Below, piece after piece: positions 3,744 to 64,000 of a stretch of 64,000 bases of DNA. The notes under the pieces were generated by a model. It saw only the letters and a list, made by a program, of their open reading frames with translations, was not told the DNA's origin and did no database searches. The translations under genes and the position numbers were made by a program. Position 1 is the stretch's first letter, and each line of letters starts with the position of its first letter. The stretch is taken from positions 8,866,001 to 8,930,000 of the forward strand of contig NC_043026.1 in assembly GCF_006345805.1 (NCBI RefSeq), read 5' to 3'. Source of the stretch: Octopus sinensis (lineage: Eukaryota).

Positions 3744-4332
3744 TATGAATGTTGTGCAGTAAGAATGTGTAACTGGAATTTAGAAATATGTTAACTTCAC
3801 ACAAGATTTTCTGATGTAAATTTTAATAAATTAAAAAGTTCTGTTGTTCAGTTAAATGTTTGTTTCTAGAGTTTATCTTTATGGAAATGTTGAATCTGTA
3901 TTTTTTTAAGTAGCCTCTATATCTTACACTGTTGTTTCTTTATTATTTCAGAATATCAGATGACATTGGCATAACTGAAGATACATTCTCATTATTTATC
4001 ATCTTTTAAAGACCAAAATGAAAATATTGTACAGAACAGATATATAAGATTGTTTCTACAAATCTGTGGTGGAATTCCTCTGAAATGTGTTATTAGCAAA
4101 TCTTCTGGACATCACTGGCTGGAGTGTCTACAAGATGTGTCTCTTTGCAAATTAAACTTGGGTAAATTTACTAACGAGTTTTGGGACAAAGGTAACAGTG
4201 GACAGAAATACAGCAGTCGAAATACTTGCAAACAAAAGACTATAGAAGTACAAAGAAGAAAACATATATATATATATATATTGTGAGAAACTAAAGGATC
4301 TGACTTTTCCAGAAGAAAAAGGGAAACAAAAA

Positions 4333-5934: not shown

Positions 5935-6296
5935 ATTTTAAATACAGTCCTGCCCTGTCTCACTGTAGCATTGCTCTCCGCTAGTCCTGACCTGTATGTT
6001 CCACCCCCATTCCCTGTCTTACTGTATTATTGCTACTGGCTTGCCCTCAACCTATGTCTTCCACCCACATGTAACAAGAAAACTTTTTACACACCCTGCC
6101 CCCAACAAACCAATCTACATCTCTTTTTCACATTCCTTCCATACACTATGCCTACCTCTCACTCCCCCAATCCTGTCCTCATGGTGCTGTTCATCTGTAT
6201 CATTGCTATCCGGTAGCCCCCTGACCCTATATAATACCCAGGTTGTCATCACTCAACACCCCCTACACTCTAATCATGCTTCCTTTGCAGTATCCT

Positions 6297-6486
6297 ATTC
6301 CTTTACTACCCACAAGGGGCTACACACAGAGAGGAGACAAACAAGGACAGATAAAGGGATTAAGTTGATTACATCGACCCCAGTGCGTAACTGGTACTTA
6401 TTTAATCGACCCCGAAAGGATGAAAAGCAAAGTCGACCTCGGCGGAATTTGAACACAGAGCCTAACTTTTCTGCCAGCTCGCCGCC
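6297..6486 (-). mobile_element. tRNA-derived Octopus SINE with 15-bp TSD (also about 17884-18073, 29058-29200, 41709-41851, 53677-53866)
   Basis: Head ggcggcgagctggcagaa, B-box-like gttcaaattcc, core gtcgactttgc(c/t)tttcatcctttcggggtcg. Flanked by cctttgcagtatcct (6282-6296) and cctatgcagtatcct (6485-6499). Confidence 0.85.
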
Positions 6487-8242
6487 TATGCAGTATCCTG
6501 TCCCTTATATTATGACGTTTGAACATCAAGGGTATGCCCTGGCACTTGCCACCATCTATATCTCCCTCTTCCTTTACTCAACCATCCTCATCTATGCTCT
6601 AATCCCCTCCCTAGTGAATACGCCCATCATTTTGCCACAATGTCCATCGTGTTGTCTCCCACCCTTATCTCCGCCTGCATTTCCCTCAGGCTGGGTAACC
6701 ATGTATCTCCTTTGTGGCGGCACACCCTTTCCTGATCTCTCTCTCTCTCTCTCTCTGGCCTGGTAAACTTGTACTTCCTCTACAGCAACAGACAGATCAC
6801 AACAAAAGATGCTGCCCAACACACAAAACCAAGCCATGAACATGCTACAGAATTTCAACTGTGATACAACTTCCACTGTTCCAGATAGAGTTACTTAAAA
6901 CTTGCCAAACCTGTTACTTCACAATTTGTAAGACATTTATATACTCTTTACTCTTTTACTTGTTTCAGTCATTGACTTTGAGTAAGTCCTCAACACCACC
7001 GTCTTCCTTTCAAGCTCTTTTAACCATTTTTTGGGAGCTGTCAAGTCCCACACAAGAAATTCCTTTGCCATTTCAACACAAAGTTCAATTACAGTTCAAA
7101 ATGTAAGAAAATAAAACAAGACACAAAAAAAGAAGGGAAGAAATAAAATAAAAAATAACAGTTCAAAAAAGAGTTCTTTTATTCTTTTAAATAAACGAAA
7201 GCTTTGAAGAAGAGAGTTCAAATCCAGGCAAAGAAATAAATTAATTTTCGGCCGTAAAGGTACTCCTGGCCAAATGTACATAGGTTCCTTGGTATGAATC
7301 ATTTTTACCTGTAATTGGTAAAAGAAATCCAAACAAAATACTGGCTACAGCCAACGGTAACTGTACCAGGTTCTAATCATTAGGGCGAGGATACGTCCCT
7401 CCACTGTTTTTGTTTTTTTTATGAATCCACAATATTCCCACTAAATTCACAAAACAGCAGCAGGCGAAATTTGTTAACAAAAAAGAACAATATAACAAAT
7501 TACACCCAGCTCAGATAAAACAAAATCACTGGCCTCGACAACCTTCTCTGTTTTTGTTCTTTTTTCTTGTAATTGGCCAGAGCCAAAACACTCACGTCCA
7601 CCTTGCAAAAACAGTCCTTCCTGCCTTGGTAATCCACAGACACGAAGATAATTTTTGCGGAGGGGCTACGCCTCCTCGAAAACACAATTCTCACTGCAAA
7701 GTGAGTCTTTATAGGCGGCCACAGGCAGGCAAATGTCTGGAGCAGATTGGAGTCTATTACTCACCAAAAAATATTAAATACAGGGCAACAAACTCCACTA
7801 AACCCTCAAAATATACGACAAACGCCTACCTGTAGTCGAGCCTCAAAGTTCAATATTTCACGACGAAAGACGTGACATCAAGCAGCAAGAACTCTCTGCC
7901 AAAAACAAACACGTCCGTCTCCGACAAAGGTAAGCAAGCTACTTACCACACAACTACTCCTGTTTACTCAATTTGAAAACTCTTTGTATTGTCTTTTGTC
8001 TCCTGTGTCTGTGTGTGTGCGCCTAAGTTCATATATGAGTAGTGTCCCTTTAATATCACGCAAAAATTGATAAAAATTTGAGAATTAAAATTAAATATCT
8101 TTTTTCTAATTGATAGAATTTTACTAAACCTTTGGATGGCAAATTGAAAATAATGTGAATATATAAACATCGCATTCGACAGAATAACGTACATGGTAAA
8201 GGGTTTCAGTAACCCCTTAGAGATTATGATTTAGTTTAAATA

Positions 8243-9247
8243 TTAGTGGGATTGCTTCTTCCCCTTATGAACACATTTGTGAGAAGTTAAGCTGCTATGT
8301 TGAGTAAATAACCTTCCACAGATATCACAAGAATATGGTGTCTCTCCTGTATGAATACGTTTATGGGTCATTAGGTTACTACTGGTAGAGAAAGATTTAT
8401 TACAGACATCACAAGAATATGGTGTCTCTCCTGTATGAATACGTTTATGTTTATCTAAGTTGCCACTTTGAGAGAATGATTTACCACAGATTTCACAGTG
8501 AAATAGTGTCTCTCCTGTATGAATACGTTTGTGTAAAGTCAAATAAATATTTTGAGAGAATAATTTACCACAGATATCACAAGAATATGGTGTTTCTCCT
8601 GTATGAATACGTCTGTGTCCAGTTAAGTTAGAACTCACGGTGAATGATTTACCACAGATATCACAAGGATATGGTGACTCTCCTGTATGAATACGTTTAT
8701 GATAAGTTAGAGCACTTTTACCAGGAAATAATTTACCACAGATATTACAGGAATATGGCTTCTTCCCTGTATGAATACGCTTGTGATTAGTTAAAGCACT
8801 TCTTTGAGAGAATGATTTACCACAGATGTCACATTGAAATGGCTTCTCTCCTGTATGACAATGCTGGTGATTACTTAAAACACTTTGGTCAGAGAATCTT
8901 GTACCACAGACACTACAATGATATGGTGACTCTCCTGTATGAATACGTTTATGTTGAGTTAGAGCACTTTTATCAGAAAATGATTTACCACAGATATTAC
9001 AGGAATATGGCTTCTCTCCTGTATGAATACGTTTATGTTTAGCTAAGTTGCCACTTTGAGAGAATGATTTACCACAGATATCACAGTGAAATGGCTTCTC
9101 TCCTGTATGAATACGTTTGTGACTATTTAAGTTACATTTACTTGAGAAAGACTTTTTACACACATCACAGTCATGTGACAATTTTTGTCTCTCTTTTTTG
9201 CTAACTTCTGGTAAAATCTGTTCCTTCACTTTCTCACTCTTTTCCAT
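8243..9247 (-). CDS. C2H2 zinc-finger protein B1, 334 aa, 11 fingers
   Basis: ATG-initiated ORF with 11 CxxC-x12-HxxxH fingers, TGE(K/T/S)PY linkers and C-terminal GKKQSH. Putative upstream acceptor at 9604-9605. Confidence 0.95.
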   Translation of the reverse strand: MEKSEKVKEQILPEVSKKERQKLSHDCDVCKKSFSSKCNLNSHKRIHTGEKPFHCDICGKSFSQSGNLAKHKRIHTGEKPYSCNICGKSFSDKSALTQHKRIHTGESPYHCSVCGTRFSDQSVLSNHQHCHTGEKPFQCDICGKSFSQRSALTNHKRIHTGKKPYSCNICGKLFPGKSALTYHKRIHTGESPYPCDICGKSFTVSSNLTGHRRIHTGETPYSCDICGKLFSQNIYLTLHKRIHTGETLFHCEICGKSFSQSGNLDKHKRIHTGETPYSCDVCNKSFSTSSNLMTHKRIHTGETPYSCDICGRLFTQHSSLTSHKCVHKGKKQSH

Positions 9248-10049
9248 TATTTTTCCTTCAACTTCACAATATACGTTCTTTTTTTATTCTTTTTGCTCCT
9301 ATAGTCTTCTGTTTACAAATATTTCAACTGTTGTATTTCTGGCCACTGTTACCTTTGTCACAAAACAACTAAATTTATCCACATTCAATCTGCAAACAGG
9401 CTCATCTTGTAGACACTCCAGCCAATGATGTCCAGAAGGTTTGCTAATAACACATTTCAGAGTAAATATATCAGAGGAATTCCACCACAGATTTATAGAA
9501 ACAATCTTATATATCTGTTCTGTACAATATTTCCATTTTGGTCTTTAAAAAGCTGATAAATAATGAGAATGTATCTTCAGTTATGCCAATGTCATCTGAT
9601 ATTCTGAAATAATAAAGAAACAACAGTGTAAGATATAGAGGCTACTTAAAAAAATACAGATTCAACATTTCCATGAAGATAAACTTTAGAAATAAACATT
9701 TAACTGAACAACAGAACTTTCTAATTTATTAATATTTATATCAGCTTAGCACTTATTCTATCAGCCACTTTTGCCAAACCACAGGTTTATGGGGACATAA
9801 ACACACCAACACTGTTTGTCAAGTGTTGAAGGGGTGGGAGGACAACACCCACACCCACACATATATATATATTGGGCTTCCTTCAGTTTCCATCTCCCAA
9901 ATCCATTCACAAAGCCAGAGGATATTGTAGAAAATGCATGTCTGTGACTAGTTACCTAACAGCTCACAATTTCTTCTCTTTAACTCCATATAGGGAAAAA
10001 ATTATTGGAAATAGTCATTACTCACTTTGCCCCATGAGGAGATTTCACG

Positions 10050-10147
10050 AATGATTACAAAAAGTTTATCAGCCAAGCAAATGGCCTTCCCTGAATGCAT
10101 TGAAAACATTATAACAGAATCACTATTTCAGGAAATTATCATTGTTC
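10050..10147 (-). other. B-intron copy of the 98-bp shared island (also 21658, 33636, 46288, 57438)
   Basis: Inverted match to 3335-3432, i.e. same sense relative to transcription of each gene. Confidence 0.85.
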
Positions 10148-10428
10148 TCTTTGAGTGTGTAGAAAGAGAAATTTGGCAGAGGCAAGAAAAGGTGAAATTG
10201 TCTCTTCAAATTATCCAGAATTACATTTGAAAACAAAGACTCAAACACATCAATATCTATCCTTCGACATCTTAAAGATCAGAAATGCAAAAAGCTATTC
10301 AAGTATCGAATTCAAATGAAAGAGAATCAGAGAAAAATTGCAAATGATGTGAAATTAATGAATATCGAATAAATGGGGGTAAAAAAATCAATATAAAATA
10401 TCATCAACAGTTTCTTCAAGATCTCTTC

Positions 10429-10742
10429 GTGGTTAGGGCAGCGGACACGCGGTCGTAGAATTGCGGTTTCGATTCCCAGACCGGGCGTTGTGAGTGTTTA
10501 TTGAGCGAAAACACCTAAAAGCTCCACGAGGCCCCGGCAGGGGATGGTGGTGATCCCTGCTGTACTCTTTCACCACAACTTTCTCTCACTCTTACTTCCT
10601 GTTTCTGTTGTACCTGTATTTCAAAGGGCCGGCCTTGTCACTCTGTGTCACGCTGAATGTCCCCGAGAACTACGTTAAGGGTACACGTGTTTGTGGAGTG
10701 CTCATCGTCGTAACCGACGGAGTGCTTCCATCCACTAACAAG
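10429..10742 (+). mobile_element. Second tRNA-headed SINE family in B intron (also from 22037, 34010, 46664, 57817)
   Basis: 5'-clipped tRNA-like head gtggttagggcagcggac(a/t)cgcggtcgtag(a/g)attgcggtttcgattcccagaccgggcg with B-box-like GTTTCGATTCC, followed by a ~250-bp non-tRNA body. Confidence 0.7.
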
Positions 10743-11011
10743 AGATTATTGAAAGTAGTCATTACTCATTTTGCCCCATCTTAGTCATGATTTTTGATAA
10801 TTGAAAATTACCAAATTAGACACTAAACGGGGGGTAAAAATTGATCTGGAATCTAAGAGGAGAAGAATATTGATGGTTAAACACCGAACATCATCCAGAT
10901 AATTTATTAGTAACCTCGATTATTATCGGATTGAGAGTTGAGGGAAAATTTCTTGATAATAAAAAGGACCTGCAACTCCAACAACTATAAGGACAAATTC
11001 CCAGTCCTAAA

Positions 11012-11214
11012 TATATATTTATTTACTCACCACAAGGGGCTACACACTGAGGGGACAAACAAGGCCAGAAAAACGGATTAAGTCGATTATATCGACCCCG
11101 AAAGGATGAAAGGCAAAGTCGACCCCGGCGGAATTTGAACTCAGAACGTAACGGCAGACGAAATACGTCCACGCATTTCGCCCGGGGTGTTAACCCTTCT
11201 GCCAGCTCGCCGCC
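11012..11214 (-). mobile_element. tRNA-derived SINE with 12-bp TSD; single here, head-to-tail dimer in units 2-5 (22621-22980, 34594-34953, 47248-47606, 58401-58760)
   Basis: Full head ggcggcgagctggcagaa...gttcaaattccgccggggtcgactttgcc. TSD cccagtcctaaa at 11000-11011 and 11218-11229. Confidence 0.85.
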
Positions 11215-11579
11215 ATCCCCAGTCCTAAAATATAATGTAGCAATACTCACAAAAATCATAAATCCAAACAAAATAGGAGAAACGGGAAAATACTCATTTT
11301 GCCCCGCTTACTAATTATGTCCCTTACCTTATATCAAGAAACAAGGGTTCGATAAATTATAATAAAGCATTGGATTCTCAGCATTTCTGTGGTTGGAGTT
11401 TATTTTAAGAACATTTCTCCACCTAAAACACACAACAAACAAACTTAAAGAAGAAACGATGGAGCGTGTAGGAGGTTGCCGCCATAGCTAGAAATAGCAG
11501 CCAAATGTGGAACAGATCAAAGGACATCTGAGACACCAAAGTATTAAAAGATTAAATGTTTTCGTTGTTTAATACTTAC

Positions 11580-11747
11580 GGAAATGTCTTTATAAAGGAT
11601 GGTGTTGTTGTTGGAAGTGCGTCAGGTGGTTGAGAAATGTATAATAAATGTGTTTGGGAGTGAATTGAGAGAAATTCTGGCACCAGACATCAAATGTTTG
11701 TCGTAACGTAATGAATGGGGGCGTACGTACGTTTAGTGCGCATGCGT
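11580..11747 (-). promoter_or_regulatory. Putative promoter motif and exon 1 of gene B1
   Basis: TGCGCATGCGT at 11737-11747. Minus-strand donor cc|GTAAGT at 11579. Reverse complement of the A arm. Confidence 0.6.
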
Positions 11748-12115
11748 ATGAAATATTGGTTTCAAATTTTGGCACAACGCCAGCAATATCGGCGGAGGTG
11801 TTGGGGGGGGGGCCTAAGTCGCTTACCTGGACCTCAGTAGACAACTAGTATTTATTTTATTGTGTCCCGCCCCAGCAAAGATATTAAAGGCAAAGTCGAC
11901 CTCGTCGTAATTTACGCATATATACATAAATATCGATGTAGGCACAACACGTGCACCCCACCGATGTCTGGGTGTTTTTTTTTGGGGGGGGGGGGGGGGT
12001 CCCAAAAATGTTTTCGGATTCTGATATCATCGATATAGAATACGATTTTGCCAAACTATCGCGTTTTCGTAGAACACCTATTTACTGTATCTGTAGAAAA
12101 AACGGCCGTTGAAGA

Positions 12116-13553
12116 AAATATCTTACAAATATCTTACAAACTACAGAATTTTCTCAATAAAGCCAAGAGGAAAAGATGTTTTATGTAACACATTCTACCA
12201 GTATACGAAGTTTAAAACTTTTTAGTTACCTAGAAATTATGTTAAAAACTGCCGTTCAAACAGAAAAGATCCCCAATCTTTTTCTTAAACGAGGGACATA
12301 TTCATACGGCACAGAATGTTTTTTTACCTCAATAGACGTGAGTGATTGGTTGAAATTGCCGAAATGCTTGAAATTAAAGACGAAATATCTTACAAACTAC
12401 ACAATTTTCTCAATAAAGCCAAGAGGAAAAGATGTTTTATGTAACACATTCTACCAGTATACGAAGTTTAAAACTTTTTAGTTACCTAGAAATTATGTTA
12501 AAAACTGCCGTTCAAACAGAAAAGATCCCCAATCTGTTTCTTAAACAAGGGACATATTCATACGGCACAGAATGTTTTTTTACCTCAATAGACGTGAGTG
12601 ATTGGTTGAAAATGCCGAAATGCTTGAAATTAAAGACGAAATATCTTACAAACTACAGAATTTTCTCAATAAAGCCAAGAGGAAAAGATGTTTTATGTAA
12701 CACATTCTACCAGTATACGAAGTTTAAAACTTTTTAGTTACCTAGAAATTATGTTAAAAACTGCCGTTCAAACAGAAAAGATCCCCAATCTTTTTCTTAA
12801 ACGAGGGACATATTCATACGGCACAGAATGTTTTTTTACCTCAATAGACGTGAGTGATTGGTTGAAATTGCCGAAATGCTTGAAATTAAAGACGAAATAT
12901 CTTACAAACTACACAATTTTCTCAATAAAGCCAAGAGGAAAAGATGTTTTATGTAACACATTCTACCAGTATACGAAGTTTAAAACTTTTTAGTTACCTA
13001 GAAATTATGTTAAAAACTGCCGTTCAAACAGAAAAGATCCCCAATCTTTTTCTTAAACGAGGGACATATTCATACGGCACAGAATGTTTTTTTACCTCAA
13101 TAGACGTGAGTGATTGGTTGAAATTGCCGAAATGCTTGAAATTAAAGACGAAATATCTTACAAACTACACAATTTTCTCAATAAAGCCAAGAGGAAAAGA
13201 TGTTTTATGTAACACATTCTACCAGTATACGAAGTTTAAAACTTTTTAGTTACCTAGAAATTATGTTAAAAACTGCCGTTCAAACAGAAAAGATCCCCAA
13301 TCTGTTTCTTAAACAAGGGACATATTCATACGGCACAGAATGTTTTTTTTACCTCAATAGACGTGAGTGATTGGTTGAAAATGCCGAAATGCTTGAAATT
13401 AAAGACGAAATATCTTACAAACTACAGAATTTTCTCAATAAAGCCAAGAGGAAAAGATGTTTTATGTAACACATTCTACCAGTATACGAAGTTTAAAACT
13501 TTTTAGTTACCTAGAAATTATGTTAAAAACTGCCGTTCAAACAGAAAAGATCC
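12116..13553. repeat. 256-bp VNTR, 5 full monomers plus partial (unit 2)
   Basis: Anchors 12176, 12432, 12688, 12944, 13200, 13457. Confidence 0.98.
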
Positions 13554-13720
13554 ATAAACTTTGCCTTTCACATTTTTCTGCTGGGGTTCAATAAAATAAA
13601 TACCAGTTGACTACTCGGGTCCATGAAATCGACTGACACTTGACCCTCCCCGAAATTTCTGGTTTTCTACCAAAATCTTTAAAAAACAAAAGAAAAAAAG
13701 AAGAAAAACCAGTATTTCAT

Positions 13721-13882
13721 ACGCATGCGCACTAAGCGTATTTCCGCCTCCATTCATTCATTTGAAAAAACTTGATTTAAGTCGGAATTTCTCTCAATTC
13801 ACTCCCAAACACATTTATAATACATTTCTCAACCACCTGACGCACTTCTAACAACAACACCATCCTTTTTTAAACCATTTCC
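13721..13882 (+). promoter_or_regulatory. Putative promoter motif and exon 1 of gene A2
   Basis: ACGCATGCGCA at 13721, donor at 13883, acceptor AG ending at 15511. Confidence 0.6.
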
Positions 13883-14442
13883 GTAAGTATTAAACTATTT
13901 AATTTCTAAATACTTCCTGTCTCAGATGTCCTTTGATTTGTGCGACATTTGGCTGCTATTTCTAGCTATGGAGGCTACCTTCTACACTTTCCATCATTTT
14001 CCCACGTTTCTTGTGTTTTCACTGTGGATAAATGCCAGAAACGGCCTCAGACTCACCGATATTTTAAATCGTAAACAGAAGCAACCAGGGGCGAAGAATA
14101 GGGTTGAAAAAAAATCATAAATGTGTTTATGAAGAGAAAAACTTCAAAAGATGGGAAAGTGAAACGAGGAGGGTTGTCTTAGGATGTGCTAGAAACAACA
14201 GCCAAATCTCCCTTAAATCACACTTTTTCCTTTGAAAATATTTACAATATTTTATTTTTTTGTTACCGAAAAGGTTTCTCCCATCGTTTTTAAGGGCAAA
14301 AATATGTTTGTTTTTTTTTTTTTTCAAGTGAAAAGTGAAGAGGCTGGTGGTAAATGAAATTTTGAAAATGCGATTTTTCAAAAAAGTTTTTTCAGAATCG
14401 GATCCTCCATAACCAAAAAGTGGGATTCCGTAAAAACAAAAG

Positions 14443-14444
<2 letters not shown>

Positions 14445-14531
<87 letters not shown>
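14445..14531. repeat. (TA)n microsatellite in A intron, longest copy; length varies between units
   Basis: Direct inspection; shorter homologous tracts near 2937, 25184, 37926, 50316, 61199. Confidence 0.98.
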
Positions 14532-14536
<5 letters not shown>

Positions 14537-15240
14537 CAAAATGGGACAAGAACGCAAAACATCCAAATAGACGATACAAAAAACACGGACGGGTCATTGG
14601 AAGCCTTCTTCAGTCAAGAACCGGATCATCCTCGCAATCCATTTTACCCTAACTTATGACGGAAAAATCGGATCTTGTAAATTTTCCGAATGTCCCCCAC
14701 CCCCCGGGTCGTTAGCACAGTTTTTTTTTTTTTTTCATTTTCGTTTTCTACATAGTTACGGACAAAACCCTTTGTAACTTTCGTCCTGTGTTTTGTCCCT
14801 TTATGTTTTAATTGATTTTTGTTAGCCCTTGTGGCCAATAAACGAACGAATTATTATTATTATTTTGTTGTCTTTGAACGACGATAATTTCCTGAAACAG
14901 TGATTCTGTTATAATGGTTTCAATGCATTTAGGGAAGGCCATTTGCTTAGCTGATGTACTTTTTGTAGGCATTTAAACAAGAGGTCTATAATTCCCCTAT
15001 TCATCAATTTCACAATATCATCATCATCATCATCGTTTAGCATCCGTTTTCCATGCTAGCATGGGTTGGACGGTTCAACTGGGGTCTGGGAAGCCAGAAG
15101 GCTGCACCAGGCCCAGTCTGATATGGTAAAGTTTCTACGGCTGGATGCCTTTCCTAACGCCAACCACTCCATGAGTGTAGTGGGTGCTTTTTACGTGCCA
15201 GACGAATCTGGCAAACAGCCATGCCCGGATGGTGCTTTTT

Positions 15241-15302
<62 letters not shown>

Positions 15303-15710
15303 TATATAATGTTGTGCAGTAGGAATGTGTAACTGGAATTTAGAAATATGTTAACTTCACACAAGATTTTCTGATGTAAATTTTAATAAATTAAAAAGTT
15401 CTGTTGTTCAGGTAAATGTTTGTTTCTAGAGTTTATCTCTATGGAAATGTTGAATCTGTATTTTTTTAAGTAGCCTCTATATCTTACACTGTTGTTTCTT
15501 TATTATTTCAGAATATCAGATGACATTGGCATAACTGAAGATACATTCTCATTATTTATCATCTTTTAAAGACCAAAATGAAAATATTGTACAGAACAGA
15601 TATATAAGATTGTTTCTATAAATCTGTGGTGGAATTCCTCTGATATATTTACTCTGAATTGTGTTATTAGCAAACCTTCTGGACATCACTGGCTGGAGTG
15701 TCTACAAGAT

Positions 15711-15834
15711 GTGTCTCTTTGCAAATTAAACTTGGGTAAATTTACTAACGAGTTTTGGGACAAAGGTAACAGTGGACAGAAATACAGCAGTGAAAATACT
15801 TGCAAACAAAAGACTATAGAAGTACAAAGAAGAA

Positions 15835-15872
<38 letters not shown>

Positions 15873-17111
15873 GAGAAACTAAAGGATCTGACTTTTCCAG
15901 AAGAAAAAGGGAAACAAAAATTGTCACATGACTGTGATGTGTGTAAAAAGTCCTTCTCTGAAAAGGGTCACTTGTATAAGCACAAACGTATTCATACGGT
16001 AGAGAAGCCATTTCATTGTGACAACTGTGGTAAATCATTCTCTCAAAAGGGTCGCTTGAATATGCACAAGCGTATTCATACAGGGGAGAAACCATTTCAC
16101 TGTGACATCTGTGGTAAATCATTCTCTCAAAATAATAACTTGACTAAACACAAACGTATTCATACTGGAGAGAAGCCTTATCGTTGTGATGTCTGTGGTA
16201 AATCATTCTCTGACCGAAGTAATTTAAATTCTCACAAGCGTATTCATACAGTAGAGACACCATATTCTTGTGATATCTATGGTAAATCATTCACTCAAAG
16301 TGGGAACTTAGCTAAACACAAACGTTTCCATACAGGAGAGAAGCTATATCAGTGCAACATCTGTGGCAAATCTTTCTCTGCCAGTAGGAACCTAACTACT
16401 CATAAACGTATTCATACAGGAGAGAAGCCATATCAGTGCAACATCTGTGGCAAATCTTTCTCTTCCAGTAGTAACATAACTAAACACAGACGTATTCATA
16501 CAGGAGAAACACCACATTCTTGTGACATCTGTGGTACATCATTCTCTCAAAGTGGGAGTTTAAATGCTCACAAACGTATTCATACAGGAGAGAAGCTGTA
16601 TTACTGCGACATCTGTGGCAAATCTTTCTCTCTTAGTAGTAACCTAACTACACATAAGCGTATTCATACAGGAGAGAAGCCCTATCACTGTGATGTCTGT
16701 GGTACATCATTCTCTCAAAGTGGGAACTTAACTGCTCACAAACGTATTCATACAGGAGAGAAGCTGTATCAGTGCGACATCTGTGGCAAATCTTTCTCTC
16801 TTAGTACGAACCTAACTAGACATAAGCGTATTCATACAGGAGAGAAGCCCTATCACTGTGATGTCTGTGGTACATCATTCTCCTACCAAAGTGCTTTCAT
16901 TTCTCACAAACATATTCATACAGGAGAGACACCATATTCTTGTGATATCTGTGGAAGGTCATTCACTCAACATGGCAACTTAACTTCTCACAAACGTATT
17001 CATACAGGAGAGACACCATATTCTTGTGATATCTGTGGAAGGTCATTCACTCAACGTGGCAACTTAACTTCTCACAAACGTGTTCATCAGGGGAAGAAGC
17101 AATCCCACTGA
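15711..17111 (+). CDS. C2H2 ZNF A2, 14 fingers (finger 5 CDIY, degenerate); start codon uncertain
   Basis: Open frame. Fingers start just after TTG 15921. The listed start is GTG and the first in-frame ATG lies inside finger 2. Confidence 0.85.
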
Positions 17112-19850
17112 TATTTGTGCTAAATCATAATCTGTAAGGGGTGACTGAACCCTTTACCATGCAGATTATTCTGTCGAATGTGAGGGTTATTTATTCCCAT
17201 TATTTTCAATTTGTCCTGCATTAACCCACAGCTTTCAAATTTTGATGATATGATTGTGTATTTTCACAATGACATTGTAGGGTAGGTGTAAGAAGCCGAC
17301 TCTGACTACTTTGATCATAAAATAGGTAGAATATTTGGGCCAGATATGGCTGGTTTAAATTCTAAAGAGTGGACACTAGATGCACCAAGTTGTCTGATCT
17401 GGCAGTGTTTCTACAGCTGGATGCCCTTCCTAATGCCAACCTGTCTGTGAGTGTAGTGGGTGCTTTTTACGTGCCACCTGCACAGGTGCCAGACGAGGCT
17501 GGCAAACGGCCACGATCGGATATTTTAAATACAGTCCTGCCCTGTCTCACTGTAGCATTGCTCTCCGCTAGTCCTGACCTGTATGTTCGACCCCCATTCC
17601 CTGTCTTACTGTATTATTGCTACTGGCTTGCCCTCAACCTATGTCTTCCACCCACATGTAACAAGAAAACTTTTTACACACCCTGCCCCCAACAAACCAA
17701 TCTACATCTCTTTTTCACATTCCTTCCATACACTATGCCTACCTCTCACTCCCCCAATCCTGTCCTCATGGTGCTGTTCATCTGTATCATTGCTATCCGG
17801 TAGCCCCCTGACCCTATATAATACCCAGGTTGTCATCACTCAACACCCCCTACACTCTAATCATGCTTCCTTTGCAGTATCCTATTCCTTTACTACCCAC
17901 AAGGGGCTACACACAGAGAGGAGACAAACAAGGACAGATAAAGGGATTAAGTTGATTACATCGACACCAGTGCGTAACTGGTACTTATTTAATCGACCCC
18001 GAAAGGATGAAAAGCAAAGTCGACCTCGGCGGAATTTGAACACAGAGCCTAAATTTTCTGCCAGCTCGCCGCCTATGCAGTATCCTGTCCCTTATATTAT
18101 GACGTTTGAACATCAAGTGTATGCCCTGGCACTTGCCACCATCTATATCTCCCTCTTCCTTTACTCAACCATCCTCATCTATGCTCTAATCCCCTCCCTA
18201 GTGAATACGCCCATCATTTTGCCACAATGTCCATCGTGTTGTCTCCCACCCTTATCTCCGCCTGCATTTCCCTCAGGCTGGGTAACCATGTATCTCCTTT
18301 GTGGCGGCACACCCTTTCCTGATCTCTCTCTCTCTCTCTCTCTCTGGCCTGGTAAACTTGTACTTCCTCTACAGCAACAGACAGATCACAACAAAAGATG
18401 CTGCCCAACACACAAAACCAAGCCATGAACATGCTACAGAATTTCAACTGTGATACAACTTCCACTGTTCCAGATAGAGTTACTTAAAACTTGCCAAACC
18501 TGTTACTTCACAATTTGTAAGACATTTATATACTCTTTACTCTTTTACTTGTTTCAGTCATTGACTTTGAGTAAGTCCTCAACACCACCGTCTTCCTTTC
18601 AAGCTCTTTTAACCATTTTTTGGGAGCTGTCAAGTCCCACACAAGAAATTCCTTTGCCATTTCAACACAAAGTTCAATTACAGTTCAAAATGTAAGAAAA
18701 TAAAACAAGACACAAAAAAAGAAGGGAAGAAATAAAATAAAAAATAACAGTTCAAAAAAGAGTTCTTTTATTCTTTTAAATAAACGAAAGCTTTGAAGAA
18801 GAGAGTTCAAATCCAGGCAAAGAAATAAATTAATTTTCAGCCGTAAAGGTACTCCTGGCCAAATGTACATAGGTTCCTTGGTATGAATCATTTTTACCTG
18901 TAATTGGTAAAAGAAATCCAAACAAAATACTGGCTACAGCCAACGGTAACTGTAACAGGTTCTAATCATTCGGGCGAGGATACGTCCCTCCACTGTTTTT
19001 GTTTTTTTTATGAATCCAAAATATTCCCACTAAATTCACAAAACAGCAGCCACCGAGAGCAGGCGAAATTTGTTAACAAAAAATAACAATATAACAAATT
19101 ACACCCAGCTCAGATAAAACAAAATCACTGGCCTCGACAACCTTCTCTGTTTTTGTTCTTTTTTCTTGTAATTGGCCAGAGCCAAAACACTCACGTCCAC
19201 CTTGCAAAAACAGTCCTTCCTGCCTTGTACTCCTTGGTAATCCACAGACACGAAGATAATTTTTGCGGAGGGGCTACGCCTCCTCGAAAACACAATTCTC
19301 ACTGCAAAGTGAGTCTTTATAGGCGGCCACAGGCAGGCAAATGTCTGGAGCAGATTGGAGTCTATTACTCACCAAAAAATATTAAATACAGGGCAACAAA
19401 CTCCACTAAACCCTCAAAATATACGACAAACGCCTACCTGTAGTCGAGCCTCAAAGTTCAATATTTCACGACGAAAGACGTGACATCAAGCAGCAAGAAC
19501 TCTCCGCCAAAAACAAACACGTCCGTCTCCGACAAAGGTAAGCAAGCTACTTACCACACAACTACTCCTGTTTACTCAATTTGAAAACTCTTTGTATTGT
19601 CTTTTGTCTCCTGTGTCTGTGTGTGTGCGCCTAAGTTCATATATGAGTAGTGTCCCTTTAATATCACGCAAAAATTGATAAAAATTTGAGAATTAAAATT
19701 AAATATCTTTTTTCTAATTGATAGAATTTTACTAAACCTTTGGATGGCAAATTGAAAATAATGTGAATATATAAACATCACATTCGACAGAATAACGTGC
19801 ATGGTAAAGGGTTTCAGTAACCCCTTAGAGATTATGATTTAGTTTAAATA

Positions 19851-26084: not shown

Positions 26085-26492
26085 TATGAATGTTGTGCAG
26101 TAAGAATGTGTAACTGGAATTTAGAAATATGTTAACTTCACACAAGATTTTCTGATGTAAATTTTAATAAATTAAAAAAGTTCTGTTGTTCAGGTAAATG
26201 TTTATTTCTAGAGTTTATCTTTATGGAAACGTTGAATCTGTATTTTTTTCAGTAGCCTCTATATCTTACACTGTTGTTTCTTTATTATTTCAGAATATCA
26301 GATGACATTGGCATAACTGAAGATACATTCTCATTATTTATCATCTTTTAAAGACCAAAATGAAAATATTGTACAGAACAGATATATAAGATTGTTTCTA
26401 CAAATCTGTGGTGGAATTCCTCTGATATATTTACTCTGAAATGTGTTATTAGCAAATCTTCTGGACATCACTGGCTGGAGTGTCTACAAGAT

Positions 26493-26614: not shown

Positions 26615-26648
<34 letters not shown>

Positions 26649-39251: not shown

Positions 39252-39299
<48 letters not shown>

Positions 39300-60304: not shown

Positions 60305-60471
60305 ATAAACTTTGCCTTTCACTTTTTTCTGCTGGGGTTCAATAAAATAAATACCAGTTGACTACTCGGGTCCATGAAATCGACTGACACTTGACCCTCC
60401 CCGAAATTTCTGGTTTTCTACCAAAATCTTTAAAAAACAAAAGAAAAAAAGAAGAAAAACCAGTATTTCAT

Positions 60472-60632
60472 ACGCATGCGCACTAAGCGTATTTCCGCCT
60501 CCATTCATTCATTTTAACAAACTTGATTTAAGTCGGAATTTCTCTCAATTCACTCCCAAACACATTTATAATACATTTCTCAACCACCTGACGCACTTCT
60601 AACAACAACACCATCCTTTTTAAACCATTTCC
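60472..60632 (+). promoter_or_regulatory. A-type promoter motif and exon 1, now upstream of gene C
   Basis: Motif at 60472, donor at 60633. The next matching acceptor is at 62881-62882. Confidence 0.55.
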
Positions 60633-61196
60633 GTAAGTATTAAACTATTTAATTTCTAAATACTTCGTGTCTCAGATGTCCTTTGATTCGTGCGACCTTT
60701 GGCTGCTATTTCTAGCTATGGAGGCTACCTTCTACACTTTCCATCATTTTCCCACGTTTCTTGTGTTTTCACTGTGGATAAATGCCAGAAACGGCCTCAG
60801 ACTCACCGATATTTTAAATCGTAAACAGAAGCAACCAGGGGCGAAGAATAGGGTTGAAAAAAGATCATAAATGTGTTTATGAAGAGAAAAACTTCAAAAG
60901 ATGGGAAAGTGAAACGAGGAGGGTTGTCTTAGGATGTGCTAGAAACAACAGCCAAATCTCCCTTAAATCACACTTTTTCCTTTGAAAATATTTACAATAT
61001 TTTATGTTTTTGTTACCGAAAAGGTTTTTCCCATCGTTTTTAAGGGCAAAAATATGTTTGTTTGTTTTTTTTTTTTCAAGTGAAAAATGAAGAGGCTGGT
61101 GGTAAATGAAATTTTGAGAATGCGATTTTTCAAAAAACTTTTTTCAGAATCGGATCCTCCAGAACCAAAAAGTGGGATTCCGTAAAAAAAAAACAG

Positions 61197-61243
<47 letters not shown>

Positions 61244-61247
<4 letters not shown>

Positions 61248-62550
61248 ATGTTACATTACTCGGTAGTCAAGATAAAACTCTGAGTTTCAGATGCCGAAGT
61301 GGAAATCCACAACACCATCTCTTCGGTTATCTGGCTATTTGAAAACGTTATGAAAAAATACCGTTAAAAATGAAGGGAAATTACTCTGTTATAACTCTGC
61401 TTTGCTTGCGTACTTATACATCGCTCGCATTTTTCGTCATAAAAATTATAAAAATACATAAAAATATATAAAATTATATAAAAATATATAAATTCTTCTT
61501 GGGACATAACACAGAAAGCATGTTCTATCCGTTTTCTTTAGGGGACCAAAAACGTAACAGAAATTTAGTCACATGTGGGCATGATCCGAAAAGCTCTGTC
61601 CTTGTATTTAGACATGTGGTAGGGTCTAAGCTGCTTTTCCAGATAAGCCATCTCTCCATGTCGCATAAACCGCACCTTCCGCTGCCGTTAGTATAGGGCT
61701 TACATCTGGCCAAAATCTTCCATTGTATGTTATAATCGACACCTTTATCTCTTAAAGACCAAATATGATTGGATAATTGTGTCGCTTTTCTTTGTTCCAG
61801 TGCCTAAAGCTCAAAGTGTGGTTATTGAACCTGGCTTTGAAATTACCCTCTGTAAGCCCACGTATTTCTTCGTCGAAACGGTGTCTTTAGTGGTTATAGA
61901 GTTTACGGTAGCTTCATATATGATGGTCTTGGACATACAAGCTCCATTTAGCGGGCACAATTCTTTATTCCTGCATGAACAGCTGTTTTCTTCTCGTGGT
62001 TTTTGTATGTTATGATTGATTATGTTTTTAAAATTGGTAGTTGAACTAAAACTAATTTTTAAATTGTGTCTATTGAAGAGTTTCCTATAAGCATGGTTAA
62101 CTGGAAAATGTCTATCTATCAGTGCTAGGAAATATTTACCTATATTGAAGGCCACCTCGGGTGAGTAAGGGGGCGTAAACCAGATGACCTTCCTATTTCT
62201 ATTATTCCTTTTCCTTACTGTTGGGCTAGTGATAGGTGTATATTTTATTTTTTCGCTAAAACCACTATCTTTTAAAGCTTTATTATAAACTGGGGCAACG
62301 CTATTGAAGATGTCCTCATTAGATGAGAGGCTAGAAATCCTCTTACTAATATTTTTAACTAAATTTTTGAATACTATAGGGGGATGGCATGAACCTACAT
62401 TAATATAACTTAGTCTATCATTGGGCTTCCTATAAGGCTTATAAATATTATTATTAAGATCTAAGGAAACGTCTAAGAAATTGACAACCGTCAGGTTAGT
62501 GTCTATAGTTATACTAAGTCCGAAGTGTTTCATTAACTGGATAATATCTA
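61244..62550 (-). mobile_element. 5'-truncated Penelope-like retroelement (RT C-terminus plus GIY-YIG endonuclease, two frameshifts) ending in (TA)n
   Basis: ORF 61811-62533: VNFLDVSL, SCHPP, IWFTPPYS, CSCx5CPLNGAC, IIYEATV...KKYVG. After two inferred 1-nt deletions the frame continues TEGNFKARFNNH...QLSNHIW...WKIL...RCGLCDME...LNTRTEL...CPH to 61525. From memory this Cys pattern and TA targeting fit the Hydra clade of PLEs (unverified). Confidence 0.9.
61264..61337 (-). ncRNA. Type I hammerhead-ribozyme-like motif in the PLE 3' end
   Basis: Minus strand: agataa-CCGAAGA-gatg...catc-t-GAAA-ctcagag-UU-ttatct. Stems I, II and III all pair by hand. Two deviations from the canonical core. Confidence 0.55.
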
Positions 62551-63237
62551 TGGCTGATAGAATAAGTGCTAAGCTGAAAAAATAAATCCTAGCATTGATT
62601 CTATTGACTGAAGCCTTTAAAGCTGGTGCTCCAGCATGACCACAGTCAAAACAACTAAAACCAGTAAAAAAGTGTGTGTGTGTGTGTATTTATGAATGTG
62701 GAGCTGGAGTTTAGAAATATGTTAGCTTCAAACAGGATTTTGTGATGTAAATATTAATAAATTAGAAAGTTCTGTTGTTCAGTTAAATGTTTATTTCTAG
62801 AGTTTATCTTTATGGAAATGTTGAATCTGTATTTTTTTAAGTAGCCTCCATATCTTACACTGTTGTTTCTTTATTATTTCAGAATATCAGATGACATTGG
62901 CATAACCAAAGATACATTCTCATTATTTATCATCTTTTAAAGACCAGAATGAAAATATTTTACTGAACAGATATATAAGATTGTTTCTATGAATCTGTGG
63001 TGGAATTCCTCTGATATATTTACTCTGAATTGTGTTATTAGCAAACCTTCTGGACATCACTGGTTGGAGTGTCTACACGATGAGTCTGTTTGCAGATTGA
63101 ACGTGGATAAATTTAGTTGTTTTGTGACAAAGGTAACAGTGGCCAGAAATATAACAGTTAAAATATTTGTAAACAAAAGACTATAGAAGCAAAAAGAATA
63201 AAAAAAGAAGGTATATTGTGAAGTTGAAGGAAAAATA

Positions 63238-64000
63238 ATGGAAAAGAGTGAGAAAGTGAAGGAACATATTTTTCCAGAAGTTAGCAAAAAAGAGAGACAA
63301 AAATTGTTACATGACTGTGATGTGTGTAAAAAGTCTTTCTCACAAAAAGGTACCTTAAATAGTCACAAACGTATTCATACAGGAGAGACACCGTATTATT
63401 GTGATATCTGTGGTAAATCATTCTCTCAAAGTAGCAACTTAACTGCTCACAAACGTTCCCATACAGGAGAGAAGCCATTTCACTGTGAAATCTGTGGTAA
63501 ATCATTCTCTCAAAAACAGAACTTGACTACACATAAACGTATTCATACAGGAGAGAAGCCATATCATTGTAGTGTCTGTGGTACAATATTCTCTCACCAA
63601 AGTGTTTTAAATAATCACCAGCATTGTCATACAGGAGAGAAGCCATATTCCTGTAATATCTGTGGTAAAATATTTCCTGGTAAAAGTGCTCTAACTAATC
63701 ACAAACGTATTCATACAGGAGAGTCCCCATATCATTGTGATATCTGTGGTAAATCATTCTCTCAAAGTTGCAACTTAACTACTCACAAACGTTCCCATAC
63801 AGGAGAGAAGCCATACCACTGTGATATCTGTGGTAAATCATTCTCTCAAAAAATTACCTTGACTACCCACAAATGTATTCATACAGGAGAGAAGCCATAT
63901 CATTGTAGTGTCTGTGGTACGAGTTTCTCTCACCAAAGTGTTTTAAATTATCACCAGCATTGTCATACAGGAGAGAAGCCATATTCCTGTAATATCTGTG
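63238..64000 (+). CDS. C2H2 ZNF gene C (B-type N-terminus, new finger set), at least 9 fingers, runs off the window
   Basis: Manual translation from ATG 63238: [60 protein letters not shown]..., no stop to 64000. Not in the ORF track, presumably because it has no stop inside the window. Confidence 0.93.

What the first reader, a model, noticed from the sequence alone, without database searches (positions are those of the whole stretch)
11412..14034. Palindromic bidirectional-promoter cassette driving a head-to-head ZNF pair
Seen: 11412-11896 and 13558-14034 are imperfect inverted repeats, repeated at every B/A junction. From the centre outwards each arm has a SINE relic, TGCGCATGCGT, a ~150-nt pyrimidine-rich segment, catttcc|GTAAGT and ~150 nt more homology. 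Each points to an identical acceptor (tttctttattatttcAG|aatatcagatgacattggc) 1.6-2.3 kb away, upstream of the finger ORF. Established: TGCGCATGCGC is the NRF1/Ewg motif, enriched with CCAAT boxes at bidirectional promoters. Inference: one two-exon ZNF gene was duplicated in inverted orientation with its promoter, and this self-contained divergent pair became the unit of amplification. Divergent ZNF pairs may already be noted for cephalopods (needs a literature check); the mirrored promoter/exon plus VNTR core is what looks undescribed.
Basis: partly seen in the sequence, partly recalled or inferred. Interest (0 to 1): 0.85.

Follow-up and report, generated by a model that had tools for sequence, protein, structure and literature searches.

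The report
Head-to-head octopus zinc-finger gene array
The mirrored "arms" are real, but each is just the ordinary start region (promoter-like motif plus a short non-coding first exon) shared by some 200 related octopus zinc-finger genes; here two already different family members sit back to back around a transposon-derived repeat, and that 11-13 kb pair was copied in tandem, so this is an ordinary gene-cluster rearrangement and not a special palindromic promoter device.

Summary
OBSERVATION: confirmed. Arms 11412-11896 and 13558-14034 are inverted repeats (79-95% by segment). They recur at all five complete junctions in the window, each with TGCGCATGCGT, CATTTCC|GTAAGT and an identical acceptor 1.6-2.3 kb away.

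INTERPRETATION: partly supported.
- The arm is not a dedicated palindromic cassette. It is the standard 5' module of a large C2H2-ZNF family. Genome counts (control hits): donor 212 (0), acceptor 235 (0), MEKSEK start context 175 (5).
- Most members lie head-to-tail; only about 14 pairs are head-to-head.
- A and B are not sister copies, so "one gene duplicated in inverted orientation" fails.
- The two motifs lie 944-1973 bp apart, so these are two separate promoters, not a <1 kb bidirectional promoter.
- The VNTR belongs to a dispersed ~240-bp repeat family that already sits upstream of head-to-tail paralogs.
- Units lacking the L arm were amplified too.
- All five A gene bodies in the window lack the family start codon (30-nt deletion). 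All B copies are intact.

SUPPORTED: a promoter-like, invariant, CpG-rich NRF1-like motif; a conserved splice donor and acceptor; and tandem amplification of the A/B pair.

No transcript data could be reached. Interest is low to moderate.

The parts
8243..9247 (-). Gene B coding region: 334-aa C2H2 zinc-finger protein (11 fingers), start ATG 9247-9245, stop 8245-8243
   Evidence: Translation; Pfam zf-C2H2/zf-H2C2_2; identical-length intact ORF in 7 of 7 B copies; the start MEKSEK... matches an annotated O. vulgaris relative
9248..9602 (-). Gene B exon-2 leader (355 nt between the acceptor and the ATG), with five short uORFs
   Evidence: the first ~140 nt are 93% conserved among 12 paralog lineages (measured on A coordinates)
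9603..11579 (-). Gene B putative intron 1 (GT..AG, 1977 nt); mostly unrelated to A's intron except the ends and a 92-nt island (10056-10147)
11580..11735 (-). Gene B putative non-coding exon 1 (maximum extent; TSS unknown), ending in CATTTCC|GTAAGT
11736..11748 (-). L copy of the invariant NRF1-like element (TACGCATGCGCAC on the gene's strand)
11780..11896 (-). L copy of the dispersed-repeat relic ('SINE relic'); homology with other family members ends at 11896
11897..12126 (.). 230-bp junction-specific segment (includes T/G homopolymers) that breaks the symmetry; found only at A/B junctions
   Evidence: only hits at 8842377 and 8853676 in the upstream 200 kb
12127..13553 (+). 256-bp-period VNTR (5.6 copies here), derived from a dispersed ~240-bp repeat family, in the orientation of gene A's upstream region; each unit carries CCAAT/ATTGG
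13558..13660 (+). R copy of the dispersed-repeat relic; the junction with the VNTR-family element is the same as in head-to-tail paralogs
13720..13732 (+). R copy of the invariant NRF1-like element TACGCATGCGCAC
13733..13882 (+). Gene A putative non-coding exon 1 (maximum extent; no ATG), ending in CATTTCC|GTAAGT; highly conserved core 13784-13882
13883..15511 (+). Gene A putative intron 1 (1629 nt). The first ~130 nt are conserved in the family and include the YY1-like element, mutated to ATGGAGGC at 13968-13975
15512..17111 (+). Gene A exon 2: open frame 15582-17111 (509 codons, 13 fingers) with no start codon before finger 2. The 30-nt deletion junction is at 15867-15885; the first in-frame ATG is at 16062
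60471..64000 (+). Sixth unit: mosaic gene with an R-type arm joined to a B-like exon 2 that keeps the start codon (ATG at 63238)

Best explanation
Each arm is the ordinary 5' end of a gene from a large, lineage-specific octopus C2H2 zinc-finger family. From upstream to downstream the module runs: a relic of dispersed repeats, an invariant NRF1-like site (TACGCATGCGCAC) in a small CpG-rich patch, a short non-coding first exon ending in CATTTCC|GTAAGT, an intron of about 0.7-3 kb, a strongly conserved acceptor, then one large exon holding a ~355-nt leader, the family start codon (MEKSEK...) and the finger array. Most family members lie head-to-tail. In this sub-array a rearrangement placed one family member (B) upstream of, and opposite to, a different member (A). 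B abuts the transposon-derived ~240-bp repeat that already lay upstream of A. The resulting 10.7-12.7 kb A/B unit then spread by unequal crossing-over or segmental duplication. A's upstream repeat expanded into a 256-bp minisatellite whose copy number differs between neighbouring units. The junction therefore holds two separate, outward-facing copies of the family promoter, about 1-2 kb apart, and not one shared bidirectional promoter. In this window B is an intact gene. A has lost the family start codon and a conserved YY1-like element, so A is most likely a decaying or non-coding passenger.

Shown: the anatomy, copy census, orientations, phylogeny, deletions and conservation pattern. Inferred: promoter activity, use of the donor and acceptor, NRF1 binding, and the order of events.
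For: - Family-wide module: exon-1 and acceptor modules occur about 20 times in the adjacent 200 kb, nearly all on one strand, 6-10 kb apart.
- Genome counts: exon-1 core 81, motif 21-mer 78, acceptor 235, donor 212 (0 control hits for each), start context 175 (5 control hits).
- An 8-copy same-orientation array with a 6.4-kb period lies at C30:10.15-10.20 Mb.
- Only about 14 (-,+) pairs lie within 3 kb of each other.
- Promoter-like signature: the motif is 98.5% conserved among 12 lineages, against 51% and 68% for its flanks. The exon-1 core is 89% and the donor 93% conserved. The motif and donor stay intact even in dispersed copies whose exon-1 core has drifted. CpG o/e is 1.41-1.57 in the arms against 0.64 for the window.
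- Gene model: the family ATG lies ~355 nt inside exon 2, and an annotated O. vulgaris relative starts at MEKSEK.
- A and B are not sisters.
- VNTR origin: the unit matches 88-92% copies on other contigs (4726 first-look candidates), and partial units sit upstream of head-to-tail paralogs with the same junction to the relic.
- Separate promoters: motif gap 944-1973 bp.
- Amplification does not need both arms: L037, L039 and L040 lack the L arm and share the same structure.
- A's decay: a 30-nt deletion removes the ATG in all five A bodies of the window (7 genome-wide). ATGGCGGC is changed to ATGGAGGC in all R arms. Two of 7 A copies have premature stops, against 0 of 7 B copies.
Against: - No transcript, CAGE or chromatin data could be reached, so TSS position, splicing and promoter activity are inferences.
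- Conservation does not mark exon boundaries. The 140 nt of intron before the acceptor (92.5%) and ~130 nt after the donor (79%, with an invariant block) are about as conserved as the exons. Gene conversion or recent duplication could explain part of the pattern.
- The leader has five uATGs, which is unusual for a 5'UTR.
- Arm-less B-like copies keep intact ORFs, and an O. vulgaris relative has the acceptor block but no arm within 7 kb upstream. So the arm may not be needed for expression.
- Deep nodes of the exon-1 tree are weak, and 5' modules and gene bodies are mosaic, so the exact origin of the pair is not resolved.
- Copy counts may be inflated by uncollapsed haplotypes in the assembly.
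Confidence: 0.7

Rival explanations
1. One two-exon ZNF gene was duplicated in inverted orientation together with its promoter. This created a palindromic bidirectional-promoter cassette that co-drives both genes, and this self-contained divergent pair became the unit of amplification because of that property.
For: The arms are mirrored and recur at every junction. Nrf-1, CCAAT and YY1 motifs are enriched at divergent promoters (PMC2077898). Each VNTR unit carries CCAAT/ATTGG. The pair is the tandem unit in the window. One junction has a motif gap of 944 bp.
Against: A and B are no closer to each other than to head-to-tail paralogs; A's acceptor block is sister to 8696362-/8673759-. The same module heads about 200 genes, mostly head-to-tail. 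Spacing exceeds 1 kb once exon 1 is included. The VNTR is a dispersed repeat belonging to A's side only. Arm-less units were amplified too. A lacks a start codon here.
Confidence: 0.1
2. The arms are terminal inverted repeats of a mobile element (or a composite transposon) whose cargo is the VNTR. The nearby ZNF exons are incidental.
For: An inverted-repeat geometry with a repetitive core. The inner ends and the core are made of dispersed repeats.
Against: The exon-1 block is not high-copy: 259 first-look candidates, with all scored hits in the ZNF region of C30. All 81 hits to the 33-mer core are on C30. The five motif sites outside the cluster are complete 5' gene modules, 90-93% identical over more than 1.5 kb to a cluster gene, and are single rather than paired. 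Most copies are single and unpaired. The arms point outwards to a conserved acceptor and ZNF ORF in every case.
Confidence: 0.02
3. The arm is conserved upstream DNA (an enhancer or old promoter relic), but the GTAAGT is not used. Transcription of these genes starts close to 'exon 2', within the very conserved block around the supposed acceptor, so the genes are effectively single-exon.
For: The ~140 nt either side of the acceptor are the best-conserved non-coding part (92-93%). The acceptor block is found without any arm within 7 kb in an O. vulgaris relative. Arm-less B-like copies keep intact ORFs. The leader has five uATGs.
Against: The donor 20-mer is conserved in 212 copies with 0 control hits, many of them exact, across several chromosomes and in copies whose neighbouring exon-1 core has drifted. 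The acceptor has a textbook polypyrimidine tract plus CAG, conserved in 235 copies. Donor and acceptor numbers match. No promoter-like motif or CpG enrichment was seen next to exon 2.
Confidence: 0.15

Closest known systems
Bidirectional (divergent) promoters of animals (TSSs <1 kb apart on opposite strands; Nrf-1, CCAAT, YY1, Sp1, GABP motifs over-represented; PMC2077898, PMC3082894)
   Same: Head-to-head genes. A near-consensus NRF1-type palindrome close to each presumed start. A YY1-like element in most family members. CCAAT boxes in the intervening repeat. A CpG-rich patch.
   Different: Two separate mirrored promoter copies, 0.94-2.0 kb apart motif to motif (1.3-2.3 kb donor to donor), not one shared region. 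The same promoter module works in a single orientation in most family members. One partner (A) lacks a start codon in this window. The CCAAT next to the motif is present only in B and is not conserved.
Lineage-specific tandem clusters of C2H2 zinc-finger genes (octopus C2H2 expansion, PMC12513265 and Albertin et al. 2015 as cited in PMC10547256; by my own recollection, mammalian KRAB-ZNF clusters on human chromosome 19 grown by in-situ tandem duplication)
   Same: Hundreds of young paralogs in a megabase-scale cluster. The finger array sits in one large exon preceded by small 5' exon(s). Finger number varies between copies (13 vs 17 here). There are pseudogenised copies and mosaic or recombinant genes.
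   Different: No effector domain such as KRAB was detected, only a short MEKSEK... N-terminus. This sub-array's repeat unit is a divergent gene pair, not a single gene. The family-wide NRF1-type promoter module has not, to my knowledge or in the library searched, been described.
Gene-bearing macrosatellites / ampliconic arrays (from my own knowledge: D4Z4-DUX4, CT47, and the palindromic amplicons of mammalian sex chromosomes)
   Same: Multi-kilobase units at 96-99% identity in tandem, each carrying genes. Higher-order blocks are repeated in both orientations across about 0.6 Mb.
   Different: The unit holds two diverged paralogs plus an internal minisatellite. There is no evidence on copy-number polymorphism between individuals or on the epigenetic state.
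Transposon-derived minisatellites (a dispersed element that expands locally into a tandem array)
   Same: The 256-bp unit matches a dispersed ~240-bp family that forms short tandems elsewhere, and a 143-bp-period array at C30:9.606-9.609 Mb.
   Different: The class of the parent element is unknown (no RNA-family or tRNA match in the arms; the unit itself was not classified). Any regulatory role for the array is untested.

Membership tests
Bidirectional promoter (standard definition) | Two genes head-to-head on opposite strands | tested here: met
   Donors, acceptors and ORFs point outwards from every junction. Direction of transcription is inferred from splice signals and ORFs, not from RNA.
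Bidirectional promoter (standard definition) | [quoted passage not shown] | tested here: not met
   The gap between the two motifs is 944, 1190, 1452, 1725 and 1973 bp; donor-to-donor distance is 1276-2302 bp. The TSSs must lie between motif and donor, so separation is roughly 1.0-2.3 kb. The exact TSSs are unknown.
Bidirectional promoter (standard definition) | Shared regulatory region / co-expression of the pair | not testable with these tools
   No expression or reporter data were available.
NRF1/Ewg-type binding site | Palindromic GCGCATGCGC core | tested here: inconclusive
   The site is GCGCATGCGT, 9 of 10; the perfect palindrome is absent from the window. It is invariant in the 27-copy alignment and in all 28 arm copies, and the surrounding 21-mer has 78 genome copies with at most 1 mismatch. 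It forms a sharp conservation island. Protein binding is not testable here.
Functional C2H2 zinc-finger gene | Tandem C2H2 fingers in an open frame with a start codon | tested here: met
   Gene B: 334 aa, 11 fingers, ATG in a good context (AAAATAATGG), intact in 7 of 7 copies.
Functional C2H2 zinc-finger gene | Same feature, for gene A of this window | tested here: not met
   The open finger frame has no ATG before finger 2, because a 30-nt deletion removed the family start in 5 of 5 A bodies in the window. One copy is also frameshifted (4246-5524).
Inverted duplication of a single gene | The two arms/genes are each other's closest relatives | tested here: not met
   Acceptor block: the A clade groups with 8696362-/8673759- (support 100/99); A-B is 91.6% against 96.4% for A-8696362. 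Exon-1 block: A-B is 84.3%; B matches other paralogs at 86-90%.
TIR-bounded transposable element | Paired arms bounding mobile DNA at many unrelated sites, with target-site duplications | tested here: not met
   The arms are confined to ZNF family loci, mostly unpaired, and always followed by the family intron and acceptor. TSDs were not sought because no such copies exist.
SINE (inner 'relic') | Dispersed high-copy short element with a pol III (tRNA/7SL/5S-like) head | tested here: inconclusive
   It is dispersed: 499 first-look candidates, with 77-84% hits on other contigs. No tRNA-like or Rfam match was found. The fragment is only ~100 nt.
Tandem segmental array (macrosatellite-like) | Multi-kb units, head-to-tail, high identity | tested here: met
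   Periods are 10.7-12.7 kb from the R-motif positions. Unit-to-unit identity is 96-99% over up to 11.5 kb. At least 8 contiguous units lie at 8.84-8.93 Mb and 4 more at 9.22-9.26 Mb.

The most novel reading that the evidence does not exclude
The A/B unit is a functional regulatory device and not a by-product. Two mirrored NRF1-type promoters are coupled or insulated by a copy-number-variable, NF-Y-site-bearing minisatellite, so that VNTR length sets the relative output of an intact ZNF gene (B) and a start-codon-less, non-coding partner transcript (A) that regulates it. In the arm-less units, A's promoter would act bidirectionally on B.
Probability: 0.05. Interest if true: 0.6.

Novelty: new member of a known kind. 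Interest (0 to 1): 0.3.

Why it matters
The cephalopod C2H2-ZNF expansion is a headline feature of octopus genomes, yet the papers I could search say nothing about promoters, exon structure or gene orientation in these clusters.

This locus gives a concrete gene model that can be tested directly. About 200 paralogs share one 5' module: an invariant NRF1-like site, a non-coding first exon, a conserved acceptor and leader, and an MEKSEK start. If the module is confirmed by RNA data, it would help explain how a young family of ~200 genes can be expressed coordinately. It would also help annotators separate intact genes from start-less copies.

The locus also illustrates how clusters grow. It shows inversion of one member, tandem amplification of a two-gene unit, minisatellite expansion of a transposon fragment, and recombination between 5' modules and gene bodies.

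It does not reveal a new kind of promoter.

Tried and rejected
1. Full-length protein search with B was swamped by vertebrate ZNFs and said nothing about the gene model.
2. Exact-protein look-ups for B found nothing (mistakenly lacked the initial Met). Records of this genome appear to be withheld, so no annotated gene extent or UTR exon could be retrieved.
The rest of the cluster was mapped only through pattern coordinates and 3-kb loci.
4. dN/dS within A and within B was uninformative because copies differ by only 0-1%. B vs the older copy 8839761 gives pN/pS of about 0.68.
5. Rfam and ARAGORN on the arms gave no hits.
6. Pfam on the VNTR ORF and the tail-to-tail spacer ORFs gave no hits.
7. 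I first concluded that every gene with an R-type arm lacks the start codon. The genome-wide pattern search showed the deletion in only 7 genes, so the claim is now limited to this array.
8. The apparent common upstream limit of acceptor-block homology at 15323 was rejected as meaningful. It coincides with a (TA)n tract in the query and low-complexity masking.
9. An alternative donor after the YY1-like block was considered. It is weak and not conserved (reading).
10. The O. vulgaris locus L030 was examined as a cross-assembly comparison. It is a distant paralog on another chromosome, not the ortholog.
11. The sigma-70 promoter scanner was not used, since it is irrelevant to a eukaryote.
Full report
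WHAT THE WINDOW IS

The window is C30:8,866,001-8,930,000 of a 2.72-Gb, 13,516-contig eukaryotic genome. The closest annotated relatives of its proteins are from Octopus vulgaris, so it is an octopus of the O. vulgaris/sinensis group. The exact species is not given. My recollection that these assembly statistics fit O. sinensis is unverified.

Self-comparison shows a tandem array of 10.7-12.7 kb units, 96-99% identical. Each unit contains a plus-strand zinc-finger ORF (type A), a minus-strand one (type B), and between their 5' sides a 256-bp-period tandem repeat. Both ORFs are multi-finger C2H2 proteins by Pfam.

CHECK OF THE OBSERVATION

The inverted repeat is real. Homology between the two halves is patchy:
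- inner relic, 13558-13634 vs 11896-11817, 79%;
- motif/exon-1/donor block, 13706-13999 vs 11762-11454, 84%, with a 111-nt stretch at 95%;
- a 92-nt island inside the introns;
- the acceptor plus exon 2, 15371-16761 vs 9744-8341, 82%, with the ~375 nt around the acceptor (15371-15744) at 94-95%.

All the listed features recur at every junction: TGCGCATGCGT, CATTTCC|GTAAGT and the identical 36-nt acceptor. The stretch between motif and donor is 60-62% pyrimidine.

The cassette is not a true palindrome. A 230-bp segment found only at A/B junctions lies between the L arm and the VNTR. The R arm has an A-rich insertion. The VNTR has a single orientation.

THE ARM IS THE FAMILY'S ORDINARY 5' END

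In the 200 kb immediately upstream (C30:8.66-8.86 Mb), the exon-1 block and the acceptor block each occur 21 times. Nearly all are on the minus strand, as head-to-tail genes 6-10 kb apart with introns of 0.7-3 kb.

Genome-wide counts, with reversed-pattern control hits in brackets:
- exon-1 core 33-mer, up to 3 mismatches: 81 hits (0), all on C30;
- motif with flanks, 21-mer, up to 1 mismatch: 78 hits (0);
- acceptor 36-mer, up to 3 mismatches: 235 hits (0);
- donor 20-mer, up to 1 mismatch: 212 hits (0);
- start-codon context, 23-mer, up to 2 mismatches: 175 hits (5).

The last three include other chromosomes. They also include an eight-copy same-orientation array with a 6.4-kb period at C30:10.15-10.20 Mb.

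Only about 14 minus/plus donor pairs lie within 3 kb of each other. The exon-1 block without the repeat relic gives only 259 first-look candidates, which is the family size and not a transposon copy number.

Five motif sites outside the cluster turned out to be complete single 5' modules of dispersed family members, 90-93% identical over more than 1.5 kb to a cluster gene.

IS IT A PROMOTER AND A FIRST EXON?

There is no RNA evidence; what follows is inference from conservation. Among 12 paralog lineages:
- the motif segment 13719-13735 is 98.5% conserved, against 51% for the 22 nt before it and 68% for the 48 nt after it;
- the exon-1 core 13784-13882 is 89% conserved;
- the donor region is 93% conserved.

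The motif and donor remain exact in dispersed copies whose exon-1 core has seven or more changes. CpG observed/expected is 1.41-1.57 in the arms against 0.64 for the window. The donor is a consensus GTAAGT. The acceptor has a long pyrimidine tract plus CAG.

The family start codon (AAAATAATGG, MEKSEK...) lies about 355 nt inside exon 2. An annotated O. vulgaris relative begins at exactly that Met.

The Nrf-1 motif is an ancient metazoan core-promoter element (PMC4773876). It is among five motifs over-represented at divergent promoters (PMC2077898).

Four points argue for caution:
- The 140 nt of intron before the acceptor and the 130 nt after the donor are about as conserved as the exons.
- The leader carries five uATGs.
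- An O. vulgaris paralog has the acceptor block but no arm within 7 kb.
- Arm-less B-like genes keep intact ORFs.

I put about 0.7 on the arm being a promoter plus a used first exon.

ORIGIN OF THE PAIR

Trees and identity matrices show that A and B are not sister sequences.
- Acceptor block: the A copies form a clade (support 100/99) with the head-to-tail genes 8696362- and 8673759- (96.4% identity), while A vs B is 91.6%. B's clade contains the head-to-tail gene 8749208-.
- Exon-1 block: A vs B is 84.3%, no higher than A vs other paralogs (78-85%), and B is closer to others (86-90%).

The palindrome is therefore only family-level homology between two already-diverged members brought head-to-head by a rearrangement. 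It is not an inverted duplication of one gene. Deep nodes are weak, and 5' modules and gene bodies are mosaic. For example, the sixth unit of the window joins an R-type arm to a B-like exon 2. The precise history is therefore open.

THE VNTR

The 256-bp unit is not locus-specific. It gives 4726 first-look candidates and ~240-bp copies at 88-92% identity on C29, C27, C28, C15 and small contigs. These often form two- or three-unit tandems. A 143-bp-period derivative array lies at C30:9.606-9.609 Mb.

Partial units (positions 1-146 and 200-254) lie about 150 bp upstream of the exon-1 block of head-to-tail paralogs, in the same relative orientation. Their junction to the repeat relic (...AAAAGATCC..|TTTGCCTTTCAC) is the same as in gene A.

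So the repeat is ancestral to the family's upstream region and belongs to A's side. In the A lineage it expanded into arrays of about 2 to 7.6 units that differ between neighbouring units. B's homology with the family stops exactly at the relic edge (11896), which is the likely rearrangement breakpoint.

NOT A BIDIRECTIONAL PROMOTER BY DEFINITION

The gap between the two motifs is 944-1973 bp in the window (953-2487 bp start-to-start across the cluster). Exon-1 ends are 1276-2302 bp apart. The accepted definition is TSSs less than 1 kb apart. The simplest reading is two separate promoters. Whether they influence each other is untested.

AMPLIFICATION DOES NOT DEPEND ON THE PALINDROME

R-type arms at 96% identity or more occur 23 times, in four blocks of alternating orientation:
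- 8.84-8.93 Mb, plus strand
- 9.00-9.06 Mb, minus strand
- 9.22-9.26 Mb, plus strand
- 9.32-9.40 Mb, minus strand

L-type partners within 3 kb exist for about 13 of them. At three units in the minus-strand blocks (L037, L039, L040), the partner gene's L arm, the 230-bp segment and about 700 nt of the intron beyond the arm are deleted. A partial VNTR unit abuts the intron directly. This arm-less form recurs with identical spacing.

GENE CONTENT OF THE PAIR

B is a 334-aa, 11-finger ORF, intact in 7 of 7 copies.

All five A bodies in the window carry a 30-nt in-frame deletion between GTGA microhomologies that removes the family ATG. Genome-wide this deletion occurs in only seven genes: six in this array and one at 9.234 Mb. 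Genes with R-type arms in the other blocks keep the start codon.
- A's first in-frame ATG is inside finger 2, at 16062.
- One A copy is frameshifted (4246-5524), and another upstream has an early stop.
- All R arms carry ATGGAGGC where most of the family has a YY1-like ATGGCGGC.
- No AATAAA or ATTAAA occurs within 1.3 kb after A's stop, whereas B has one 190 nt after its stop.

In this window the "pair" is therefore one intact gene plus a probably decaying or non-coding partner.

LITERATURE

No held paper links cephalopods, ZNFs and bidirectional promoters. The 2025 study of cephalopod C2H2 expansions does not mention promoters, exons, orientation or pseudogenes. Wells et al. 2023 treats octopus ZNFs only in bulk. 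The family-wide 5' module therefore appears undescribed, but it is a detail of a known phenomenon.

VERDICT

Promoter-like arms, splice signals and pair-wise amplification hold. The palindromic cassette, the inverted duplication of one gene and the bidirectional promoter do not.
- The locus is a new member of a known kind: a lineage-specific tandem ZNF cluster with a locally inverted member, an amplified two-gene unit and a transposon-derived minisatellite.
- Interest is 0.3.

Noticed in passing
window 12127-13553 (and 109-2045, 35864-37034, 48511-49424, 59647-60304); G000:C30:9605696-9609440; C29:11538066-11538872: The 256-bp VNTR unit belongs to a dispersed ~240-bp repeat family (4726 first-look candidates) that forms short tandems with 17-24-bp spacers on other chromosomes. 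A long 143-bp-period derivative array lies about 0.7 Mb away. The element class is unknown.
   Followed up: partly
window 60471-64000: The last unit is a mosaic: an A-type (R) arm and intron start joined to a B-like exon 2 that keeps the start codon (ATG at 63238). This is evidence for recombination or gene conversion between 5' modules and gene bodies.
   Followed up: partly
window 15867-15885 (also 4279, 26643, 39294, 51660): The 30-nt deletion that removes the family start codon lies directly after a (TA)n microsatellite, which reads as IYIYIY in the open frame. The microsatellite length differs between copies, and its closest ATG-bearing relative (8827856-) has the same microsatellite.
   Followed up: partly
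window 4246-5524; 15582-17111; 26364-28139; 39237-40790; 51621-52904: A copies come in 13-finger and 17-finger versions, with one frameshifted copy, and B copies come in two near-identical alleles. The two kinds of unit are interleaved along the array, which suggests a higher-order repeat.
   Followed up: partly
window 15372-15650 and 9465-9744: About 140 nt either side of the acceptor is the best-conserved non-coding block of the family (92-93% among 12 lineages). It includes two short conserved uORFs (MTLA, MEILYRTDI/MKILYRTDI). The 355-nt leader has five uATGs. The reason for this conservation is unexplained.
   Followed up: partly
window 11478-11491 (B, sense ATGGCGGC) and 13962-13975 (A, ATGGAGGC): A YY1-like element sits within an invariant block (GGCTGCTATTTCTAGCTATGG...) about 80 nt downstream of the donor. 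It is conserved in most family members but mutated at its CpG in all R-type arms.
   Followed up: partly
G000:C30 9.00-9.19 Mb vs 9.34-9.53 Mb: Positions and orientations of about 12 family modules repeat at an offset of 334-338 kb, which suggests a large direct segmental duplication or an uncollapsed haplotype in the assembly. Within each copy there is a local mirror arrangement centred near 9.154 and 9.488 Mb.
   Followed up: no
G000:C30:8973131-8974094 and 9288628-9289498: Two further head-to-head family pairs have no VNTR, and their exon-1 cores are only about 0.75 kb apart. They are better candidates for a true <1 kb bidirectional promoter than the junctions in the window.
   Followed up: no
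G000:C30:10152201-10201444: Eight or more family donors lie in the same orientation at a regular 6.4-kb period. This is a clean head-to-tail tandem array of the same gene family.
   Followed up: no
window 17112-19850 (and the equivalent tail-to-tail spacers, e.g. ORFs 5969-6766, 17556-18428, 53349-54242): The spacer between the 3' ends of A and B holds 265-297-codon open frames in C-rich sequence with no Pfam match. No AATAAA or ATTAAA occurs within 1.3 kb after A's stop, whereas B has one at 8054.
   Followed up: partly
L030 (O. vulgaris GCA_951406725.2, OX597841.1:6932811-6950001): A distant family member on another chromosome of a second octopus assembly has the acceptor block (90% identical) and the MEKSEK start, but no arm, motif or donor within 7 kb upstream. 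Its annotated protein ends in a non-finger tail.
   Followed up: partly
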